DNA of 63,909 nt, the filler included, from Hyphochytrium catenoides (lineage: Eukaryota; Protista; Hyphochytriomycota), in NCBI GenBank assembly GCA_900088475.1. It is 5 parts of 5 records of this genome, joined end to end, with 100 filler letters (N's around TTAATTAATTAA, not from the genome) between each part and the next. Parts side by side here need not be neighbours in the genome. Positions count along the whole stretch, not along the records: positions 48,998 to 57,841 come from FLMG01000367.1; 4 more parts are not named here. The stretch is one strand, 5' to 3'. Below, in pieces: positions 48,998-57,841 of this stretch. The notes beneath the pieces are model-generated. The model did no database searches. It saw only the letters and a program-made list of their open reading frames with translations, and had not been told where the DNA came from. Every line of letters starts with the position of its first letter. The stretch's first letter is position 1. The translations under genes were made by a program, and so were the position numbers.

Positions 48998-49227
48998 AAT
49001 GATCACTCAGTCCTGAGAGCCTGGTCTGGACTCGAGATCTTTTTGCTCGGCCCAGCTTCCCTCATCATCTCTCTCTCCTGTGCTGCTCCTGTTTTCTTCT
49101 GGAAATTCTTCTCACAACCCTCTTTCCCAATACACAGGTGTACCCGTAACGTCTATGTCCCTGAGAGCTAGGTGTGTATAGAGAGTGACTACTGTACTAC
49201 TGACAACGAACATTGTAGCACTCAACA
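48998..49227 (-). mobile_element. Partial copia LTR (LTR-C)
   Basis: Reverse-complement match to the LTR at 50129 (ctgagagctaggtgtgtatagagagt...cactcaaca). Confidence 0.75.
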
Positions 49228-49559
49228 GTCCTCGTCCTCTTCCACCAGGGGAACGTCCCCTATTTCGGCCCCTCCGACCACCACCCGGCAACAGACCTCT
49301 TCCTGCTCCATTGCTGGCCCCCCCGCCCACCACCAGCGGTTATGCTTGTTGCTGAGTAGCAGCAGTAGCATCGTGAACCTCAAGCGAGGTAATTATACAG
49401 GAAATGTTAGGCCTAAAACTACCGATAGGAGAATCGCAGTATCTCTGCAACCAGAGCTCCGATTAAGCTCAAACTTCGTGCCATCCTTCCTCAATAGACC
49501 GTCTACCACCTGCATATCGCATACCTGCCTTCAACTTTTCAATCATCTATGATCTAGTG

Positions 49560-49870
49560 GTCATAGGAGGGCCAATGCTCGCCAATTTGGACTCATTATA
49601 ACCAGGTGTTTTGCTGGTTCCTGGGGGAGGTCTCTATATATTACCTCATTATAATGAGTCAAATCGGCTTAGGGATATCCGGCCAACCCCCAATATCAAA
49701 ACTAAGTGCTCACCATCCAATGATTAAATCTAGCATGGTGTACGCTCCGAGCGATTTAACTCGGGCAATATATTGAGCCATTCGGTTCTGTGACACGGAT
49801 GACCATCACAGTTCCATTTGAATCTAGAGCTTACAGAGTTCTCTAGATTCCGGGGGAGTGTTAAATCACT
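49560..49870 (+). mobile_element. TRIM-like element related to LTR-A: LTR end, PBS, ~110-bp internal region, PPT and start of second LTR
   Basis: U5 ...aagtgctcaccatccaatgattaaatctagca (ends 49735) matches the LTR-A end. PBS TGGTGTACGCTCCG at 49736-49749; internal hairpin GAATCTAGAG/CTCTAGATTC; PPT GGGGGAG at 49852-49858 followed by TGTT. Confidence 0.7.
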
Positions 49871-49889
49871 CAAGTCAAGCAGCTGCTCG

Positions 49890-50060
49890 CGAATCGCTTC
49901 GTTGTCACGGACCTGGGATAATTGCAATATTTTCTAGGGGTCGAAGTTCCTAGAGACCGACCCAATCGCAAGGTATACCTTAGACAAACGAGATATATCC
50001 AAGTACTGAAGAAATTTCGTATGGAGGACTCTAACCCAACCAGCACCCCAGCTGTGGCAG
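49890..50060 (+). pseudogene. Ty1/copia reverse transcriptase fragment
   Basis: FVVTDLG-LQYFLGVEVPRDRPNRKVYLRQTRYIQVLKKFRMEDSNPTSTP. Confidence 0.8.
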
Positions 50061-50128
50061 GAGGAGCATCTTCCCATGGCGTACGAGCTCCCAGCGTTGA
50101 GTCCGACCGAAGAGCAGGAGTTATTACA

Positions 50129-53100
50129 TGTTGAGTGATACAATGCTTGTGGTCAGTAACCACTCTCTATACACACCTAGCTCTCAGAGGCATAGTCGTT
50201 ACCGGTATAAACTGTGTTATGGGTGAAGAGAGATATGAGGAAAATTCCCTGATCTCTTCTTTTGAGCAAAAAGATCTTGTTTTTAGGATGAGGATGGAAC
50301 GAGGGAAGATTGATCAGCAGAGCCCAAGAGAGAGATTCATTGAGTCAATTGACAGATAATCATCATCAAGTCCCTTTGCTATCGTTTCATCTAGACAGAG
50401 CTCCAGACGGCATCAACATCTACCTCTGCAATATTTCATCAGGTTATGTTAGGCCCACACTCCAAGTTGGTGACTGCTGCTCCTCTGCTCAACTGAGCGC
50501 TGGAGTGACGACCTTGTCCCATCAAGATGACATCAAAGGAAGGCGGAGTTCATCCACACAATATCGCTGTTCTACGCAGCAAGGACCAGTATGCTATCTG
50601 GTCAAGCCGGGTACGAAGTTACCTGGATGAGTTAGACCTCCTGGTCCACATCGAGGATGAGAGTCAGACACTGCTGGCTGATGGCAAAGATCCGCTCACC
50701 TGTAAGGATTTCACGGAGACGAGCAAGAAGAACTGGAAGAAGAATGATCGGAAGACAATTAGCAAACTAGTTCGTTCCACTTGTGTCTGATGAGCTCCTG
50801 TCGCTGCTGGAAGGGCAACCATCAGCCTACGCGGGGTGGATAAAACTGCAGGAGCAGATGGACGGAAGAGAAGGGGACAACGCTCTCAGGCGTCTACAGG
50901 AGATCACCAACTAAAGGTTTGATATTGACGGTCCTATTTCCCTGAGATCCCACCTGGTCATGCTAAAGGCAGCGAACAGATGCTTTGAAGTCATTTCGAG
51001 AGGAGGAAGGAGAACCAGGAAGATATTTACGAAACTATCCTGATCTCTTCCATCCTACAAAGCCTGCCGGCGTCCTTCGACTCCATAGTGAATCATCTGT
51101 ATGTCGTAGGGACTTCCTCTCTGGCTGCAGACGAGGTCACCAACCGGATTTGGGCCGATGAACAGAGAAGAGTGTCTAGCTCTTCTCACTCATCACCAGA
51201 GCAGCAACCTTCTTCCTCGGAGCTGAATGCACTCGCTGCAAGGGAAAGTAAAAGAGAGGAAGCATCAGAAACGCAGCGACGACAGCAACAACCTGCTCGT
51301 AGTAGCAGACAGTGCGGCATCTGTCGGAAAAAGGGGCACCATAGCGCAGACTGCTGCACGCAGGCCATCAGGCTGGAAGCCTCGCTTCCACTTTGGACAA
51401 GCTGCCGGCGTCACAACCGTCAAGAGTAGGCCATGAGCAAGTTAGTCCCTTGTTAGCTGCTCTCCTATCCTCCTCCTCCTCTTCTTCTCCCGGAGGAGCT
51501 CAAACTAATGAATTGGGATTAGCCAATCAGTATGCAAAGTCCTCTGTCAACTCTGGTGAATCCCTTACCCTAGCTTCTACCCAGCAAGCTGCAGCGAAGG
51601 CGAGAGAAGTCCAGAGCAGCCACAAATGGCTGCTAGACAGCGGATGCTCCAGTCACAGTACTGGACATCGATCACTCTTTCTTTTTTCCACTCCTATTGA
51701 CGCTCTTCCTCTCTTTACCGCTGACAACAACAGGCCAGTCTTTGCCGTGGGAAAGGGAAGCATACGCATCCCTGCTGCCAATAGAGCTACCACTCCTCTC
51801 TACCTGCCGAAATGTGCTCTATGCGCCAGGTTTTCTGAAGCATCTTCTCTCTATTGGACAATACATCCAACCTCTGGTGAAGCAGTGTTATTTACCGCAG
51901 ATGGAGCTTACACTCTCAGTCCTTCATTGGTCAAGGACATTGCAAAGTTAATCTCACAAGAACAAGTGAGACGTATTTGTTTGACCAATGGAACCGTTTA
52001 TTACTCCTCGGACACTGCCGATGGACGGGGACAAAGAAGTGACTTCTTCTCCTCCAAGACTAGCCGCAGCTACAAGCAAGCAAGAGCCTAACACCCTGTG
52101 GCACAAACGGCTTAATCATCTTAACCACCACACAGATATTCGAAGACTAGCCGTAAAGGCTTCAGGTATAGCTCTTGATAGAGCTTGTCAGCAGCCGTGC
52201 CTCTGTGAGACCTGCATTCTAGCCAAGCTTACACGTAAGCCTTTCCACGCTCAGCCTCGCAAGACAACAAGACTGCTTGAACTTCTGCATGCTGACGTTG
52301 GCATTGTCAATACTCGTAGCTACCAAGGCTATGTATACTTCCTACTCGTTGTAGATGATCACTCGCGGAGGTGCTTTGTACATAAGAAGCAAAGCAGAGG
52401 CAGAAAGTAAGCTGGAGAAGCTTATTCTCTTTATAATGGAGAACCAGACGGGTCAGTGTGTCAAGGAGATTCGCTCCGATCGCGGGGAAGAGTTCATGAG
52501 TGGCGCTGCTCACAGTGTCTGCTCTCGCCGCGGAATCTTGCACTCACCTACACCTGCTTATTCACCCTCTAGCAACGGATGCTGTGAACGTTGGATGAGA
52601 ACTGTCATGCAAGCGACGAGATGCCTTTTGCCGCTGAGCTGCCTAGTAGCCTCTTTTGGGCAGATGCATTGGCCTCAGCTGTTTACGTCGTCAACCGCTG
52701 CCCAACTGGCTCTCTCGCTGGCTCTACTCCGTACGAGAAATGGTACGGGAAGCCACCTGATGTTGGTCACCTACGCGTCTCTGGTTCACTGGCGTATGCC
52801 TTGAAGCCCTCGACGATGCTCAAGAAACTTGATGCACGGAGCTCTCGGTATATGTTTGTAGGGTACGACTCTGGCTGGTATGCATGGCTATCGGCTGTAT
52901 GACCCTGTGACGAAGAGAATCTCTGTGCGGCGTGATGTAATTATTGACGAGTCTCGCTCGGGTGCATTTTTGTTGAAGAAGGCCGGGAGGCAGGAGCTGT
53001 TCCCAACAATCGCGAGCGAAGAAGCCACTACAGTTGATTTAGCACCACTAGATGCTGAAGAAGAAGTAGTGATGAGACAAGAAGGACAAAGTGCACGCGC

Positions 53101-53429
53101 GGTCGGGACAGAAGAAGAAGTAGCAGTGAGACAAGAAGGACAAAGTGCGACAAGAAGGACAAAGTGCACGCTCGGTCGGGACAACAGGTGCAGCAGAAGG
53201 ATATGGCTCGGTCGGGACAGCAGGTGCAGCCGATGCCATTGGTTCCCCCGTGTCGGCACCCGACCGACCGCAGCGAAGCGAGAGATAGTTCTTCCTTGAA
53301 GACAAGCGACACCGAGGTTGGGGACAATGAAGACTCACCCGCAGATTCTTCTCCCTCCTCTTCTGCCGCAACGACCACCCCTCCTTCACTCGGTCCTACG
53401 GCGGATAGACTGTTGTTACAGGAAAAGAC
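50129..53429 (+). mobile_element. Decayed Ty1/copia retrotransposon: 5' LTR (50129-50441), PBS, gag-protease-integrase, 3'-truncated
   Basis: TGTTGAG...CATCA LTR then GGTTATG..GGCCC. Zinc knuckle CGICRKKGHHSADC; protease WLLDSGCSSH; LWHKRLNH, CETCILAK, LLHADV, VDDHSR, IRSDRGEEF, SNGCCER, KLDARS. Multiple frameshifts and stops. Confidence 0.92.
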
Positions 53430-54508
53430 TGATGAACTTTACAGAGCTGGGTGGCAATGCCTGAAGCTTCTGTACGAGCACAATCTAGATGAAACGATAA
53501 CAAAGGGACTGGTAGTGATATATGATAAAGATATTTCTGAATGACTGAGTCATGTGGTCTGTGTGGTCTGCTCTCAAGATCTTTGCTCGTCCCAGCTTCC
53601 TTCCTCATCTCTCTCTCCTTCCTGTGCCGCTCCGGCATTATTCTTCTCACATCTTCTGTCTCTCCGATAACACAGGTGTACCCGTAATGTCTATGTCCCT
53701 GAGAGCTAGGTGTGTATAGAGAGTGAATGTTGTACTACTGACAACAAACATTATTGCGAGCCCGAAGGGCGAGCCTCAATTTCAACTCACAGGGGCTTCA
53801 GCACAAATGGAACCTTTGGTGTCGTCTGTGTGTCTGTGTGTCTGTTTGTCTGTCTGCGAGCAAAATTTCACTATTTGCATTTTTACTAATCACTGTTTGG
53901 GCTTTTTCTTTGGGTTTGAATCATTGTTTGTGTACTTTGGAGATAGAAATGGGTTCACAGGAGGAGCGAAAGGGTTTCTATAAAAAACATAAATCGAATT
54001 TGTAGCGCAAGAGGTATCACTATAAACCGAGACACATCGCGTGCTTCTACGCGAATTTGTGTTGTAACCTCATATTCTCATATTACCTGAGACGCATCAC
54101 CTACAATCCTGTTTTTTAGCTGTAGTAGGAGCTGAGGGTGAAGGTGACATGTCACGCGACTCTTGCAGCAGTCGAGAGTTGAGAAAGTTTCGCTGAATGT
54201 TTCGCCACTCACTCACTCACTCACCCTCACTCACTACTCTGCTGTAGGAAGCGTGGGTGAAGGAGTAGAGAGATCCCTTCTTAAAAGTGTGCCTACCTCC
54301 TCTAGGAAATACTACTGATAGAACTAGAACTAGTTCTCGAGTTCTAAAACAATGTAGAATGAATGGAGAGCTCCTGGTGTTACTTGTACAACTAAATCAG
54401 TGATCCAAGCATCTTCCGCTAATAATGCTGCCGAAGGCTGGATTACGCACTAGTAGTAAAGTCGGGCGAGCCCTAGGCGAAGCCTAAAGCTATTGATAAC
54501 ACTCCTCA
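53430..54508 (-). mobile_element. Copia LTR-C (antisense 3' LTR), interrupted by a non-autonomous Helitron
   Basis: Reverse complement of the 50129-50441 LTR family; PPT-like GAGGGGAG on the minus strand just beyond 54510. Confidence 0.7.
53754..54496 (+). mobile_element. Non-autonomous Helitron/HINE-like element (743 bp)
   Basis: Same termini as 2118-9978; internal (GTCT)n and (CACT)n tracts; inserted at A|T. Confidence 0.88.
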
Positions 54509-54831
54509 GCACTCCCCTCATACTTAGCTTCTCTGGATCATCAGTGGTGGCAGTCGAGTTTCTTAGATTTTGACTTGTGGGGTACTTGGGAAATTGGAAA
54601 GTGAGATTAGTATGAAATGGGGCCCGGACCAGAGGAGGCGGCCCTATTTAAATGGTGGTCTATCGCCATACATAATACTAGCAGCTAACTGTGCTAACTT
54701 GTAATGGCGATATCTCAGCAACTAGAAAGAGTAAGAAGAGACTTGGACAGTATAATGACCGTCATTTATACTACCGGCGGATCCTACGTCCAATATAAAT
54801 TACTCACTCACTCTCTCCCCCTCAGACGAAG

Positions 54832-55060
54832 CTAGGTGGGTAGTGGCAAGAGTACTGATACTAGGAGGGAGCACTCCAAGATGAGGTGAGGACGCAGTGT
54901 GCGAAAGAGAGGAGCGGCTAAAGGCTTGGTGAGGCAATCGGCTACCATCGCTCCGGAGGGAGTATAGACCAGCTTAATTCTCCCATTGGCTACCTTCTCT
55001 TGCAGGACACAGTGATTGATATCTAAAGTCTTTGACTTTGGTCGTGAAGAGGAGGAGAGG
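54832..55060 (-). pseudogene. Ty1/copia RNase H C-terminal fragment
   Basis: SKTLDINHCVLQEKVANGRIKLVYTPSGAMVADCLTKPLAAPLFRTLR. Confidence 0.8.
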
Positions 55061-55506
55061 ACAATCGCGCTCTTGTATTTCCAACCATCGCATATAATCC
55101 AAAACATCAGTATTCTGGTCAATGCGTAGCTTGTCCTTAAAACCCTTCATTTGCATGATCTCTTCAGTCAGATCTCACCTGCGTCGTTGTTCTGCAAGAA
55201 AGGCTGGAAGCGTGGCTACATCTGTTGTTGGTAAGGTACTCCATTAAGGTACCCCAAATGTTTGAAAGTCGCAACGTCGACAACGTAGGTACCACCATAG
55301 TTGGATAACTTACCAACAAATAACAGGATGTTACCAACCTTCCAGCTTTCCTGCAGAACAACGACGCAAGTGGTGTTTGATTTTATCATTGGTGGTGACC
55401 ACTTTGAATTAATATTGGGGGTGTCTGGATATACATGAGAAAGGCTTTGTACGCCCCGAGATTCGAACCCAGGACCTGTGTATTTGATGCCGACACCCTA
55501 ACCAGT

Positions 55507-55829
55507 AGTTGGAGTCTGAGGACACAGCTATGTGGCCTACAAGCTGGCAAGCTTAGCTACCCAAGTTCAGCTCCAAACTCCCAGTAGAAGCCGAGATATG
55601 AAGCAAACGAAATGTCCCTGTTTATATCTATGGCTTATGGTCAGGACCCCGGAATACCTTCAGTACTGACTATTCCAGACCGGGATATCTCTATAAATCC
55701 CATATCCTAGACTTTATTCGGAATAGTCGGCATAGTCAGAATAACCCTAGATTATGGGACCCCAGTTGGGCTTATAGGTAGAGCACTCTCATCTAATGAC
55801 ATTGTCCAATCATCCCATATAATCCAACA
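55507..55829 (+). mobile_element. Solo LTR-B inserted in the tRNA cassette
   Basis: (A/T)GTTGGAG...CCAACA with 5-bp TSD CCAGT (55502-55506 and 55830-55834). Confidence 0.88.
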
Positions 55830-55918
55830 CCAGTATGCATCATAGACCAAACTCTGGTTTTGTTTATATACCAGGGATTTCTCCCCTCTGCGTCGTCCGC
55901 TGTACACTTTTTGGTTTC

Positions 55919-56202
55919 TGTTGGAGTCTGAGGGCACAGCTATGTGGCCTACAAGCTGNNNNNNNNNNNNNNNNNNNNNNNNNNNNNNNNNNNNNNNNNN
56001 NNNNNNNNNNNNNNNNNNNNNNNNNNNNNNNNNNNNNNNNNNNNNNNNNNNNNNNNNGATTTCTCTATGACTGAATATCTTAGGGTTTATTAGGAAAACT
56101 TGGCATAGTCAGAATAGCTCTAGATTATGGGACCCCAGTTGGGCTTATAAGTAGAACACTCTCATCTAATGACATTGTCCAATCATCCCATATAATCCAA
56201 CA
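55919..56202 (+). mobile_element. LTR-B insertion (spans an N gap; solo LTR or gapped larger element)
   Basis: TGTTGGAG...CCAACA with 5-bp TSD GTTTC (55914-55918 and 56203-56207). Confidence 0.8.
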
Positions 56203-56335
56203 GTTTCAGCGTCGATCACAGTTAAATTCTTCCGGAATCTAGAGAACGCTGTAAGCTCTAGGAGGCCGTCCGGGTAAAAATCAAATACAATACCCATTTT
56301 TCTTCCAATTGTCCCACTTTTGGCGTGGGAAACTT

Positions 56336-56594
56336 TGTTAGATTTTTATCATTGGATATTGAGCACTTTGAATCAATATTGGGGGGTGTCTGGATATACC
56401 GGAGAAAAGTTTTGTACGCTCCGGAATTTGAACCCAGGACCTCTGTCTTTGATGCCGACACCCTTACCAGTATGCACCATACACCAAACGTACTCTTGAC
56501 TAATCTCCGTTCTTGTTTATATACCAGGGATTTTCCCCTCTGCGTCGTCCGCTGTTGTACACTTTTTGGTTTCAGCGTCGATCACAGTTCAACA
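56336..56594 (-). mobile_element. LTR-A with tRNA cassette (56413-56493), probably solo
   Basis: TGTTAGA...TTCAACA; flanks AACTT/CACTT (4 of 5 match, TSD-like). Confidence 0.85.
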
Positions 56595-56697
56595 CACTTA
56601 CCCTTAATGGGTGCATAAGCGGCGAATAATTGAGTGGAAGTGGAAGTGATCATTCAGAGAAATCTCCATCACACATCATTACCAAGTCCCTTTGTTA

Positions 56698-57349
56698 TTG
56701 CGAGCCTGAAGGGCGAGCCTCAATTTCAACCCACAGGGGCTTCAGCACAAATGGACTTTTTCGTGTTTTGTGTGTCTGTGTGTGTGTGTGTGTGTTTGTG
56801 ATCAAAATTTCACTATTTGGTTATTCACTAATCACTGTTTGGGCTATTTCTTTTGGTTAGGTTCTGTATGTAATTCTAAGCGAAAGGGGCTTTAGGAGCA
56901 TAACTCGAATTTGTAACGCGAGACGTATCATAATAAACCGAGACACATCGCGTGCGTCCACGGGAATTTGTGTTGTATCCTCATACTAGTACCTGAGACG
57001 CATCACCTACTATACTGTATATTTAGCTGTAGGAGCTGAGTGTGGAGGTGACATGTCACGCGACTCCTGCAGCAGTCGAGAGTTGAGAAAGTTTCACCAT
57101 TCACTCACTCACGACTCTGTCGTAGGAAGCGTGGGTGACCGAGTAGAGAGATCCTTTAGCGAGTGTGCGTACCTAGGAAATAATGATAGAACTAGTTCTA
57201 CAGGATGTAGAAGGAATGAAGAGTTCTTGGTGTTATTATTTGTACAACTAAATCAGTGATCCAAGCATCTTCCATTGATTATGCAGTCGAAGGCTGGAAT
57301 ACGCACTATTAGCGTCGGGCGAGCCCTAGGCGAAGCCTAAAGCTATTGA
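56698..57349 (+). mobile_element. Non-autonomous Helitron/HINE-like element (652 bp) inserted in a copia LTR-C
   Basis: Same termini. The flanks rejoin to ccctttgttata gtttcatc, matching the uninterrupted LTR-C (ccctttgttatcgtttcatc, reverse complement near 53500). Confidence 0.88.
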
Positions 57350-57417
57350 TAGTTTCATCTAGATTGTGCTCATACAGAAGCTTCAGGCATTGCCACCTAG
57401 CTCTGTAAAAATCATCA

Positions 57418-57430
57418 GGTTATGGGCCCA
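57418..57430 (+). other. Copia primer-binding site complementary to the anticodon arm of initiator tRNA-Met (half-tRNA priming)
   Basis: GGTTATGGGCCCA directly follows the LTR end ATCATCA and is the complement of TGGGCCCATAACC in eukaryotic tRNAiMet. Confidence 0.8.
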
Positions 57431-57692
57431 TGTTTGATTTTATCATTGGATGGTGGTGAGCACTTTGAATTAATATTGGGGGGTGTCTAGATATACCGGA
57501 GAAAAGTTTTGTACGCTCCGGGATTCGAACCCAGGACCTCTGTCTTTGATGCCGACACCCTAGCCAGTATGCACCATCCATACACCAAACGTACTCTTGA
57601 CTAATCTCCAGTTTTGTTTATATACCAGGGACCTTCCCCTCTGCGTCGTCCGCTGTACACTTTTTGGTTTCAGCGTCGACCACAGTTCAACA
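57431..57692 (-). mobile_element. LTR-A with tRNA cassette (57510-57594)
   Basis: TGTTTGA...TTCAACA; consensus B box GGTTCGAATCC on the minus strand. Confidence 0.85.
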
Positions 57693-57841
57693 TGTTGAAT
57701 GTTCAGCTTCGACCTTTCACAATTGGGAGTTCCAGCTGCGGGGAGGTGTTGGAGTCTGAAGACACAGCTATGTGGACTACAAGCTGGCAAGCTTACTACC
57801 CAAGTTTCAGCTCCAAACTCCCAGTAGAAGCCGAGATATGA
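57693..57841 (+). mobile_element. LTR-B long variant, truncated by the contig end
   Basis: tgttgaa...cttcgacc.ttcacaat.ggga...ctgcggggagg-TGTTGGAG matches 11048-11200. Confidence 0.75.

What the first reader, a model, noticed from the sequence alone, without database searches (positions are those of the whole stretch)
49736..49766. Retroelement PBS is the exact complement of the tRNA mimic carried in the family's own LTR (candidate self-encoded primer system)
Seen: an LTR end homologous to LTR-A U5 is followed directly by TGGTGTACGCTCCG. The tRNA-like cassette in LTR-A (2322-2402, 56413-56493, 57510-57594) ends CGGAGCGTACA; adding CCA gives CGGAGCGTACACCA, the perfect 14-nt complement. The complement continues loosely across a T-arm-like hairpin (CCGAG/CTCGG). 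The internal hairpin/PPT block at 49823-49853 recurs next to a tRNA-bearing LTR (56232-56262), tying both to one family. Known: LTR elements normally borrow host tRNA primers; Cassandra (5S) and Helenus (tRNA-like) TRIMs carry Pol III cassettes read as promoters; Tf1 self-primes from its transcript 5' end. Inference: this family may encode its own primer RNA. Caveat: the PBS-bearing copy here lacks the cassette, and no PBS is visible after the cassette-bearing copies.
Basis: partly seen in the sequence, partly recalled or inferred. Interest (0 to 1): 0.92.

Follow-up and report, generated by a model that had tools for sequence, protein, structure and literature searches.

The report
tRNA-bearing miniature retrotransposon matching its own primer site
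A small non-coding LTR retrotransposon of the known 'Helenus' type carries a tRNA-like gene in its repeats, and that gene's 3' end exactly matches the element's own primer-binding site. This is unreported for such elements, but a normal cell tRNA of the same kind is still the likelier primer.

Summary
At 49736-49749 an LTR end (...CA) is followed by TGGTGTACGCTCCG. This is the exact complement of CGGAGCGTACA plus CCA, the 3' end of the tRNA-like cassette in LTR-A copies A1 and A2. The 11-mer occurs only at these sites (4 hits, 0.05 expected).

The elements are Helenus-type TRIMs (Kojima 2024): ~260-bp TG...CA LTRs with a tRNA-derived cassette and a ~120-bp internal domain with PBS and PPT.

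The window copy is a truncated fragment. A 409-nt soil-metagenome contig joins a cassette-bearing LTR-A directly to this U5/PBS-type internal domain and closes on itself as one LTR-plus-internal unit.

Kojima reported no cassette-PBS complementarity in any Helenus family, so this family is an exception.

Self-priming is not shown:
- The cassette is sub-threshold as a tRNA (23.8 bits against a cut-off of 29).
- PBS nucleotides 15-18 and the adjoining T-arm-like hairpin (CCGAG/CTCGG) do not fit the family's cassette.
- The only two-LTR copy in the window has a different sequence at the PBS site.
- The host tRNA set could not be reached.

Most likely (0.6) a cellular tRNA of the cassette's parent species primes the element. 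A self-encoded primer remains possible (~0.2).

The parts
49672..49735 (+). 3' end (U5 side) of a truncated 5' LTR of the LTR-A family, ending ...CTAGCA
   Evidence: 78-82% identity to the last ~65 nt of LTR-A copies A1, A2 and A3. Upstream of ~49664 there is no significant similarity to LTR-A. All contigs of the source organism read A at 49733, as copy A1 does.
49736..49749 (+). Primer-binding site TGGTGTACGCTCCG. It complements the 11-nt cassette 3' end plus CCA. With copy A3's T-stem variant, 15 of 16 nt (to 49751) would pair.
49747..49764 (+). Hairpin CCGAG-CGATTTAA-CTCGG overlapping the PBS. Read on the other strand it is a T-arm-like stem-loop followed by AGCGTAC-A-CCA.
   Evidence: The stem differs from the cassette's CTGGG/CCCGG while still pairing 5 of 5.
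49736..49858 (+). Complete 123-nt internal domain of the TRIM, from PBS to PPT, with no ORF
   Evidence: The soil-metagenome contig lies on 49675-49862 with 12 differences and 1 gap.
49824..49858 (+). Conserved hairpin (CTAGAG...CTCTAG) and polypurine tract CCGGGGGAG
   Evidence: 29 of 30 positions identical to 56232-56261.
49859..49866 (+). First few bases (TGTTAAAT) of the 3' LTR. The rest is missing and a copia RT fragment follows.
   Evidence: LTR-A starts TGTTGAAC. A tblastn match of copia protein P0216 residues 632-704 is reported at 49838-50053; its first ~25 nt cross two stop codons.
57431..57692 (-). LTR-A copy A2 (262 bp, TG...CA). TATA box at LTR nt 69, cassette at 57510-57594, T4 run 4 nt after the cassette.
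57510..57594 (-). tRNA-like cassette of A2 (85 nt): 7-bp acceptor stem, T arm with the motif GGTTCGAATCC, irregular D and anticodon region
   Evidence: ARAGORN calls it tRNA-???. Rfam tRNA gives 23.8 bits against a cut-off of 29. Fold.
56336..56594 (-). LTR-A copy A1 (259 bp), with its cassette at 56413-56493
   Evidence: 90% identity to A2. No Rfam tRNA hit even at E<=10. Fold.
56227..56335 (-). Variant internal domain between A1 (5' LTR) and A3 (3' LTR). It has the same hairpin/PPT block, but AAGTTTCCCACGCC... stands where the PBS should be.
55374..56226 (-). LTR-A copy A3, split into 55374-55506, 55835-55918 and 56203-56226 by two nested solo LTR-C insertions. Its cassette 3' end reads CGGGGCGTACA and its 5' acceptor strand is lost.

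Best explanation
The site is the primer-binding site of a Helenus-type TRIM, a miniature non-autonomous LTR retrotransposon whose LTRs carry a tRNA-derived Pol III-type cassette.

The canonical unit is an LTR of ~260 bp plus a ~120-nt internal domain.
- The LTR holds a TATA box, about 30 nt later an ~85-nt tRNA-like cassette, a T4 run, and ~75 nt of U5.
- The internal domain holds the PBS, a hairpin and the PPT.

The window's 49672-49866 is a truncated copy. It keeps only the U5 end, the whole internal domain and the first bases of the 3' LTR.

The PBS is an ordinary tRNA-3'-end PBS (TGG, then the discriminator and acceptor strand). Minus-strand synthesis is most likely primed by a cellular CCA-tailed tRNA that has the same acceptor stem as the cassette. 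The match would then exist because the cassette descends from that tRNA species. It could have been captured from the packaged primer, or an unrelated insertion could have come from the same isoacceptor by chance.

Shown: the anatomy, the exact complement, and the co-occurrence of cassette and PBS in one unit. Inferred: the identity of the primer.
For: - Anatomy: TG...CA LTRs, the PBS directly after ...CA, PPT CCGGGGGAG before TGTT, no ORF.
- The cassette has a 7-bp acceptor stem and a T arm, but is sub-threshold as a tRNA.
- The architecture matches Helenus (PMC10886601).
- Co-occurrence: the X4 contig (409 nt) lies on 49675-49862. Its 28 overhanging letters are identical to the cassette end plus spacer of A1/A2, and its other end lies on the cassette at ~55436. 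It therefore closes on itself as one LTR-plus-internal unit.
- For a cellular primer:
  - the PBS begins TGG, which is not encoded after the cassette (AAA follows);
  - PBS nt 15-18 are AGCG, whereas the cassette form read in all 17 X1 contigs would give GGAT (55455 C>T and 55459 A>G in every contig);
  - the adjoining hairpin is a perfect 5-bp T-stem (CCGAG/CTCGG). It differs from the cassette's stem at three positions, two of them a compensating pair. That is expected if it was copied from a separate, structurally constrained tRNA.
- Established knowledge: known LTR elements with a TGG-type PBS use cellular tRNAs.
Against: - No cellular tRNA with this 3' end was seen. The piece holds none. 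Two metagenome pattern scans gave 0 hits and 56 non-tRNA chance hits.
- If cassette origin and primer choice were independent, the same isoacceptor would be hit only about once in 20-40 (my estimate).
- Kojima found no such match in any described Helenus family.
- The hairpin next to the PBS could be a structure of the element's own RNA rather than a copy of a tRNA.
- Whether the PBS is intact in the metagenome contig is not printed (12 unlisted differences in 188 nt).
Confidence: 0.6

Rival explanations
1. Self-encoded primer acting in trans. Each LTR cassette is a complete small Pol III gene. Its transcript would be trimmed by RNase P and RNase Z, given CCA, packaged, and used as primer by family members carrying the matching PBS.
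For: - Exact 11-nt complement at precisely the acceptor 3' end, plus TGG for CCA.
- Cassette-bearing LTR and PBS occur in one unit.
- The acceptor stem and T arm, the minihelix that RNase Z and the CCA-adding enzyme need (established knowledge), are intact in A1 and A2 although the rest has decayed.
- A TATA box lies ~30 nt upstream and a T4 run 4 nt downstream in A1, A2 and the X4 contig. The T4 run would end a Pol III transcript before the PBS, which fits a small-RNA gene better than a promoter for the genomic RNA.
- All contigs keep the matching base at 55455.
Against: - PBS nt 15-18 and the T-arm-like extension do not fit the consensus cassette. The PBS is recopied from the primer at each cycle (established retroviral mechanism), so a cassette primer should have imposed ...CCGGGAT.
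- The cassette scores 23.8 bits against Rfam's cut-off of 29, and copy A1 gets no hit.
- The only two-LTR copy in the window lacks this PBS.
- No RNA data exist: no RNA run holds the region.
- The uniformity of the copies may only reflect recent amplification.
Confidence: 0.2
2. Self-priming in cis. The genomic RNA starts at the cassette. RNase Z (or RNase H, as in Tf1) cuts after the discriminator A. The released tRNA-like 5' piece, once CCA-tailed, folds onto the PBS ~75 nt downstream and is extended.
For: The TATA box ~30 nt before the cassette would place a transcript start at or near the cassette's first base. The complement lies ~75 nt upstream of the PBS in the same LTR. The ~75-nt stretch after the cassette could serve as R.
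Against: - Unlike Tf1-type elements, the complement is not at the first bases of the LTR transcript, and the PBS carries TGG.
- It shares the mismatch at PBS nt 15-18 with the trans model.
- There are no data on transcript ends.
Confidence: 0.05
3. Not a functional relation. The 11-nt complement would be an inverted scrap of the cassette placed next to an LTR end by rearrangement in this heavily nested region.
For: The region is a dense nest with truncations and copies lacking TSDs. The window copy is itself broken at both ends.
Against: - The same arrangement stands in an independent soil-metagenome contig.
- Homology to the cassette stops after 11-13 nt instead of running on.
- TGG sits exactly where CCA must pair, directly after ...CA, and a PPT follows 100 nt later.
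Confidence: 0.05

Closest known systems
Helenus TRIMs ('TRIMp3'; Kojima 2024, Biology 13:119, PMC10886601)
   Same: A miniature non-coding LTR element with a tRNA-derived sequence, including box A/B-like motifs, in sense orientation inside each LTR. The PBS follows the 5' LTR directly and a PPT precedes the 3' LTR. The cassette is not a credible functional tRNA. Copia-type TGTT...AACA termini; nested relatives make 5-bp TSDs.
   Different: - Kojima states that no Helenus shows complementarity between the LTR's tRNA-like sequence and its PBS. Here 11 templated nt plus CCA match exactly.
- Short motifs of this LTR and internal domain were not found in his 87-kb family file.
- The LTR (~260 bp) is longer than the fungal and Selaginella family LTRs seen in the passages read from his supplement (~120 bp).
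- The neighbouring copia is nearest to plant and green-alga copia, not to rust fungi.
- A T4 run directly after the cassette argues against read-through Pol III transcription of the whole element.
Cassandra TRIMs (5S rRNA cassette in the LTR; Kalendar et al. 2008, as cited in PMC10886601)
   Same: A Pol III small-RNA gene copy carried in both LTRs of a TRIM. The cassette may be transcribed on its own.
   Different: Here the cassette is tRNA-like, not 5S. A 5S RNA cannot act as a PBS primer, whereas a tRNA-like RNA in principle can.
Tf1/Tf2-type self-priming LTR retrotransposons (Levin 1995; from my own knowledge)
   Same: A stretch of the element's own LTR transcript is complementary to its PBS (11 nt in both).
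   Different: In Tf1 the complement is the first 11 nt of the transcript, there is no TGG/CCA, and RNase H makes the cut. Here the complement is the 3' acceptor strand of an internal tRNA-like fold, and the PBS demands an added CCA.
tRNA-derived SINEs and the strong-stop-DNA model of their origin (Ohshima/Okada; from my own knowledge)
   Same: A decayed tRNA copy that keeps the Pol III boxes. The model links a tRNA-derived repeat to the primer tRNA of an LTR element.
   Different: The cassette lies in sense orientation inside a TG...CA LTR and upstream of U5. That is not the tRNA-antisense-U5-R order which strong-stop DNA would give. The element moves by PBS/PPT, not by LINE machinery.

Membership tests
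Helenus / TRIMp3 | Short non-autonomous LTR element: two LTRs, an internal portion of ~85-620 bp, no ORF | tested here: met
   LTR-A is 259-262 bp and the internal domains are 109 and 123 nt. Only short chance ORFs (up to 65 aa) overlap the 123-nt domain; none lies within it. The X4 contig closes as one ~380-bp LTR-plus-internal unit.
Helenus / TRIMp3 | tRNA-derived sequence with box A/B motifs inside the LTR, in sense orientation | tested here: met
   ARAGORN calls copy A2 tRNA-???. Rfam tRNA aligns end to end at 23.8 bits. The B box GGTTCGAATCC is perfect in A2. The A-box region TGGTGTATGG is only partly consensus.
Helenus / TRIMp3 | PBS just after the 5' LTR and PPT just before the 3' LTR | tested here: met
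   49736-49749 follows ...CA. CCGGGGGAG at 49850-49858 precedes TGTT.
Helenus / TRIMp3 | Target-site duplication (5 bp in fungi and plants, 4 bp in animals) | tested here: inconclusive
   No LTR-A copy in the piece has a TSD: the A3...A1 flanks are AGTGG and CACTT, and the A2 flanks are GCCCA and TGTTG. The nested LTR-C solo LTRs do have 5-bp TSDs, but they belong to another family.
Helenus / TRIMp3 | Cassette acts as the Pol III promoter of the element's RNA | not testable with these tools
   No RNA run holds the region. A T4 run 4 nt after the cassette argues against it.
Tf1-type self-priming retrotransposons | PBS complementary to the first ~11 nt of the LTR transcript, with no tRNA/CCA requirement | tested here: not met
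   The complement is LTR nt 172-183, ~80 nt after the predicted start, and the PBS starts with TGG.
Bona fide tRNA gene | Passes a tRNA covariance model and has an assignable anticodon | tested here: not met
   No hit at E<=1 over the whole piece. A2 alone scores 23.8 bits against 29. A1 gets no hit. ARAGORN reports a 4-base 'anticodon'.
Cassandra | 5S rRNA-derived sequence in the LTR | tested here: not met
   No 5S hit in Rfam scans of the piece. The cassette is tRNA-like.

The most novel reading that the evidence does not exclude
This TRIM family carries its own primer gene. The LTR cassette would be a self-contained Pol III unit (upstream TATA, internal boxes, T4 terminator). Its RNA keeps only the acceptor/T-arm minihelix needed for RNase Z cutting and CCA addition, and the CCA-tailed product primes reverse transcription at the family's PBS. 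It would be the first LTR retroelement shown to encode a tRNA-mimic primer, and it would explain why some TRIMs keep tRNA-like cassettes.
Probability: 0.2. Interest if true: 0.85.

Novelty: new variant of a known kind. Interest (0 to 1): 0.5.

Why it matters
LTR retroelements are thought to borrow cellular tRNAs as primers or, in the Tf1 group, to use their own 5' end.

[quoted passage not shown] The only survey answered no, because no family showed any complementarity. This family shows exact complementarity at the correct end, with the CCA accounted for.

That makes the question testable in a concrete system:
- If a cellular tRNA fits, the case documents a cassette derived from the element's own primer species, which bears on how such cassettes arise.
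- If none fits, it would be a new priming strategy.

It also matters for annotation. Such cassettes inflate tRNA gene counts, and this family extends Helenus-type elements to a host whose neighbouring copia looks plant- or alga-like rather than rust-like.

Tried and rejected
- I tried to fetch other genomic copies through chance ORFs across LTR-A, and through the copia ORF. There were no usable hits, so the source organism's proteins are not in the collection.
- The representative search, cluster look-up and encoding-contig look-up gave only one related metagenome copia (L057). It has the iMet anticodon-loop PBS and no LTR-A.
- Metagenome pattern scans for a tRNA gene ending in this acceptor strand gave 0 hits, then 56 hits. 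None of the 56 is a tRNA by ARAGORN and none resembles LTR-A. This says nothing about the host.
- Viral-contig scans gave 8 unexamined hits to the 16-nt PBS pattern (presumably chance) and 0 hits.
- Full-text search for the PBS or acceptor strings returned only unrelated primer sequences.
- Motif look-ups in Kojima's family file found no matching family.
- I considered that the window copy's LTR is an 'empty' cassette-less ancestor. Rejected as unsupported: similarity upstream of ~49664 is no better than shuffles (score 24 against a mean of 23.7).
- By eye LTR-C seemed to hold a tRNA-like half. Rfam gave no tRNA hit, so I dropped it.
- The isotype of the cassette could not be assigned. Class-II-like length, a Pro-like loop and an intron-like insertion are all possible readings.
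- The organism's name is coded in the run table and stayed unknown.

Full report
**What is there**

The piece 48998-57841 is a dense nest of small LTR elements (self-BLAST).

One repeat, here called LTR-A, is 259-262 bp long. It starts TGTT and ends AACA on the window's minus strand. It occurs three times:
- A1 at 56336-56594.
- A2 at 57431-57692.
- A3 at 55374-56226. A3 is split by two nested solo LTRs of another family, each with a 5-bp target duplication.

Read in sense, each LTR-A has these parts:
- a TATA box at nt ~70;
- about 30 nt later, an 81-85-nt tRNA-like cassette;
- the spacer AAAC followed by TTTT;
- about 75 nt to the ...AACA end.

**Quality of the cassette as a tRNA**

- ARAGORN calls only A2, as tRNA-??? 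with a four-base 'anticodon'.
- Rfam's tRNA model finds nothing at E<=1 over the whole piece.
- Given A2 alone, it aligns end to end at 23.8 bits, below the cut-off of 29. The acceptor, D and T arms are placed, with 22 extra bases in the anticodon arm.
- A1 gets no hit at all.
- RNA folding keeps a 7-bp acceptor stem and a 5-bp T arm with a 7-nt loop in both A1 and A2. The middle is irregular.

So this is a decayed tRNA copy that has retained its acceptor/T-arm minihelix and a perfect B box.

**The observation**

At 49672-49735 on the plus strand lies a 64-nt stretch 78-82% identical to the last part of LTR-A in sense orientation, ending ...CTAGCA.

It is followed at once by TGGTGTACGCTCCG (49736-49749). 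The cassettes of A1 and A2 end CGGAGCGTACA, so with CCA added the complement is 14 of 14.

The 11-mer, allowing one mismatch, is found only at the PBS and the three cassette ends: 4 hits against 0.05 expected. A random 11-mer finds its complement anywhere in the LTR with p about 5e-5.

About 100 nt downstream, a hairpin plus CCGGGGGAG precedes TGTT. That block recurs, 29 of 30 positions identical, next to LTR-A copy A3.

**What kind of element**

Two short LTRs, a 109-123-nt non-coding internal domain, a PBS, a PPT and a tRNA-like sequence in sense inside the LTR make up the architecture of Helenus. Helenus is the tRNA-bearing counterpart of Cassandra, described by Kojima in 2024.

Short motifs of this LTR and internal domain are absent from his supplementary family file, so it is not one of the described families.

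The degenerate copia next door carries gag, protease-like, integrase and SH3-like domains. It is nearest to one metagenome copia (57% identity), then to plant and green-alga copia at 35-41%. Its PBS fits a tRNA-iMet anticodon arm reading GGGCCCAUAACC. A rust fungus is therefore unlikely.

**The caveat about the missing cassette**

The window copy is a fragment.
- Upstream of ~49664, similarity to LTR-A is no better than chance.
- Downstream, only TGTTAAAT of the 3' LTR remains before a copia RT fragment begins.

I laid Logan contigs of three runs of the source organism and one soil metagenome on 49600-55599. One soil-metagenome contig of 409 nt gave the following:
- It lies on 49675-49862 with 12 differences and one gap.
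- Its 28 overhanging letters before 49675 read CCCGGAGCGTACAAAACTTTTCTCCGGT, identical to the cassette end plus spacer of A1 and A2.
- Rows with the same depth (8.72) place its other end on the cassette of A3 at about 55436.

The contig therefore starts and ends in the same ~30 nt and represents one closed unit: cassette-bearing LTR plus this internal domain. The expected length is 262+123 and the observed length is 409 minus the k-mer overlap.

In the source organism, 27 contigs cover 49733 and all read A, as A1 does. All 17 contigs at 55455 read the base that restores GGAGCGTACA, so A3's mismatch is private.

In the listed rows, no PBS position differs from the window in all contigs; 625 further rows were not shown. 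The contig's PBS itself was not printed.

**Why this is unusual**

Kojima tested the same idea. He wrote that no complementarity exists between the LTR's tRNA-like sequence and the PBS in any Helenus family, and concluded that the cassette does not contribute to priming. This family is an exception to that statement.

**Which RNA primes?**

Nothing here shows cassette RNA. No RNA run holds the region.

Three points favour a cellular tRNA:
- The PBS starts with TGG, while the cassette is followed by AAA, so the primer must be CCA-tailed.
- PBS nt 15-18 are AGCG. The cassette form read in every contig of the source organism (T stem CCCGG, loop ending AT) would give GGAT. In retroviral-type replication the first 18 nt of the PBS are recopied from the primer (established mechanism), so a cassette primer should have imposed its own sequence.
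- The bases after the PBS form a perfect hairpin, CCGAG-8 nt-CTCGG. On the other strand this is a T arm joined to AGCGTAC-A-CCA. It differs from the cassette's CTGGG/CCCGG at three positions, two of which compensate each other. A perfect 5-bp partner at a T-loop distance has a chance of about 0.003 (my arithmetic). This looks like a copy of a different, structurally constrained tRNA with the same acceptor stem. It could also be a structure of the element's own RNA.

Points against the cellular-tRNA reading:
- No such tRNA was seen. The piece has none, and metagenome scans gave only non-tRNA chance hits.
- An independent choice of the same isoacceptor for cassette and primer would be a 1-in-20-to-40 coincidence.

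**Points that keep the self-primer idea alive**

- The acceptor/T-arm minihelix is exactly what RNase Z and the CCA-adding enzyme require, and it is the part that survived.
- The cassette has an upstream TATA box and a T4 run 4 nt downstream in A1, A2 and the metagenome contig. This looks like a complete small Pol III gene.
- That T4 run would stop Pol III before the PBS. This fits poorly with the view that the cassette merely promotes the genomic RNA.

**Verdict**

The family is a new Helenus-type TRIM whose PBS matches its own cassette.

| Reading | Estimate |
|---|---|
| A cellular tRNA of the cassette's parent species is the primer, with the cassette descended from or captured from it | 0.6 |
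| A self-encoded primer acting in trans | ~0.2 |
| Cis self-priming | ~0.05 |
| A rearrangement artefact | ~0.05 |

The remaining ~0.1 is unassigned.

A further loose end: the only two-LTR copy in the window (A1, internal domain 56227-56335, A3) has another sequence at the PBS position and no target duplication.

A tRNA scan of the source genome and tRNA-seq would settle the question.

Noticed in passing
window 55507-55829 and 55919-56202 (also 57747-57841): Solo LTRs of a second family ('LTR-C', TGTTGGAG...CCAACA, ~323 bp) are nested inside LTR-A copy A3. Each has a 5-bp target duplication: CCAGT at 55502-06 and 55830-34, GTTTC at 55914-18 and 56203-07. The second holds the assembly gap 55959-56057. 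A third LTR-C start at 57747 is preceded by the PPT-like GCGGGGAGG.
   Followed up: partly
window 50442-50457 and 57418-57430; L057:1518: The degenerate copia (gag start 50527) has a PBS of the 'tRNA-iMet anticodon-loop' type. It reads GGTTATGGGCCCA at 57418-57430, with a 3-nt insertion in the copy at 50442-50457. A related metagenome copia has the same PBS. LTR-A copy A2 abuts this PBS directly, without a target duplication.
   Followed up: partly
window 49863-50053: A fragment of a copia reverse transcriptase directly abuts the truncated TRIM. A tblastn match to P0216 residues 632-704 (E 2.6e-9) is reported at 49838-50053 and includes a stop codon. No upstream part of that RT is present in the piece.
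   Followed up: partly
window 53751-54498 and 56695-57351: A ~650-750-bp repeat (76% identity) sits inside what looks like the copia LTR. The LTR's last ~70 nt also occur inverted at 53429-53498.
   Followed up: no
window 55176-55372: A ~200-bp imperfect palindrome (70% self-complementary) lies immediately beside the end of LTR-A copy A3.
   Followed up: no
window 49805-49814 vs LTR-A nt 5-14: A 10-nt stretch of the TRIM's internal domain (ATCACAGTTC) is the exact complement of the LTR's 5' terminus (GAACTGTGAT). It could be a long-range pairing or an inverted LTR scrap.
   Followed up: no
window 56227-56335: A variant internal domain between two cassette-bearing LTRs keeps the hairpin/PPT block. 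It has AAGTTTCCCACGCCAAAAGTGGGA (itself a hairpin) where the PBS should be, and I could not match it to any tRNA region.
   Followed up: partly
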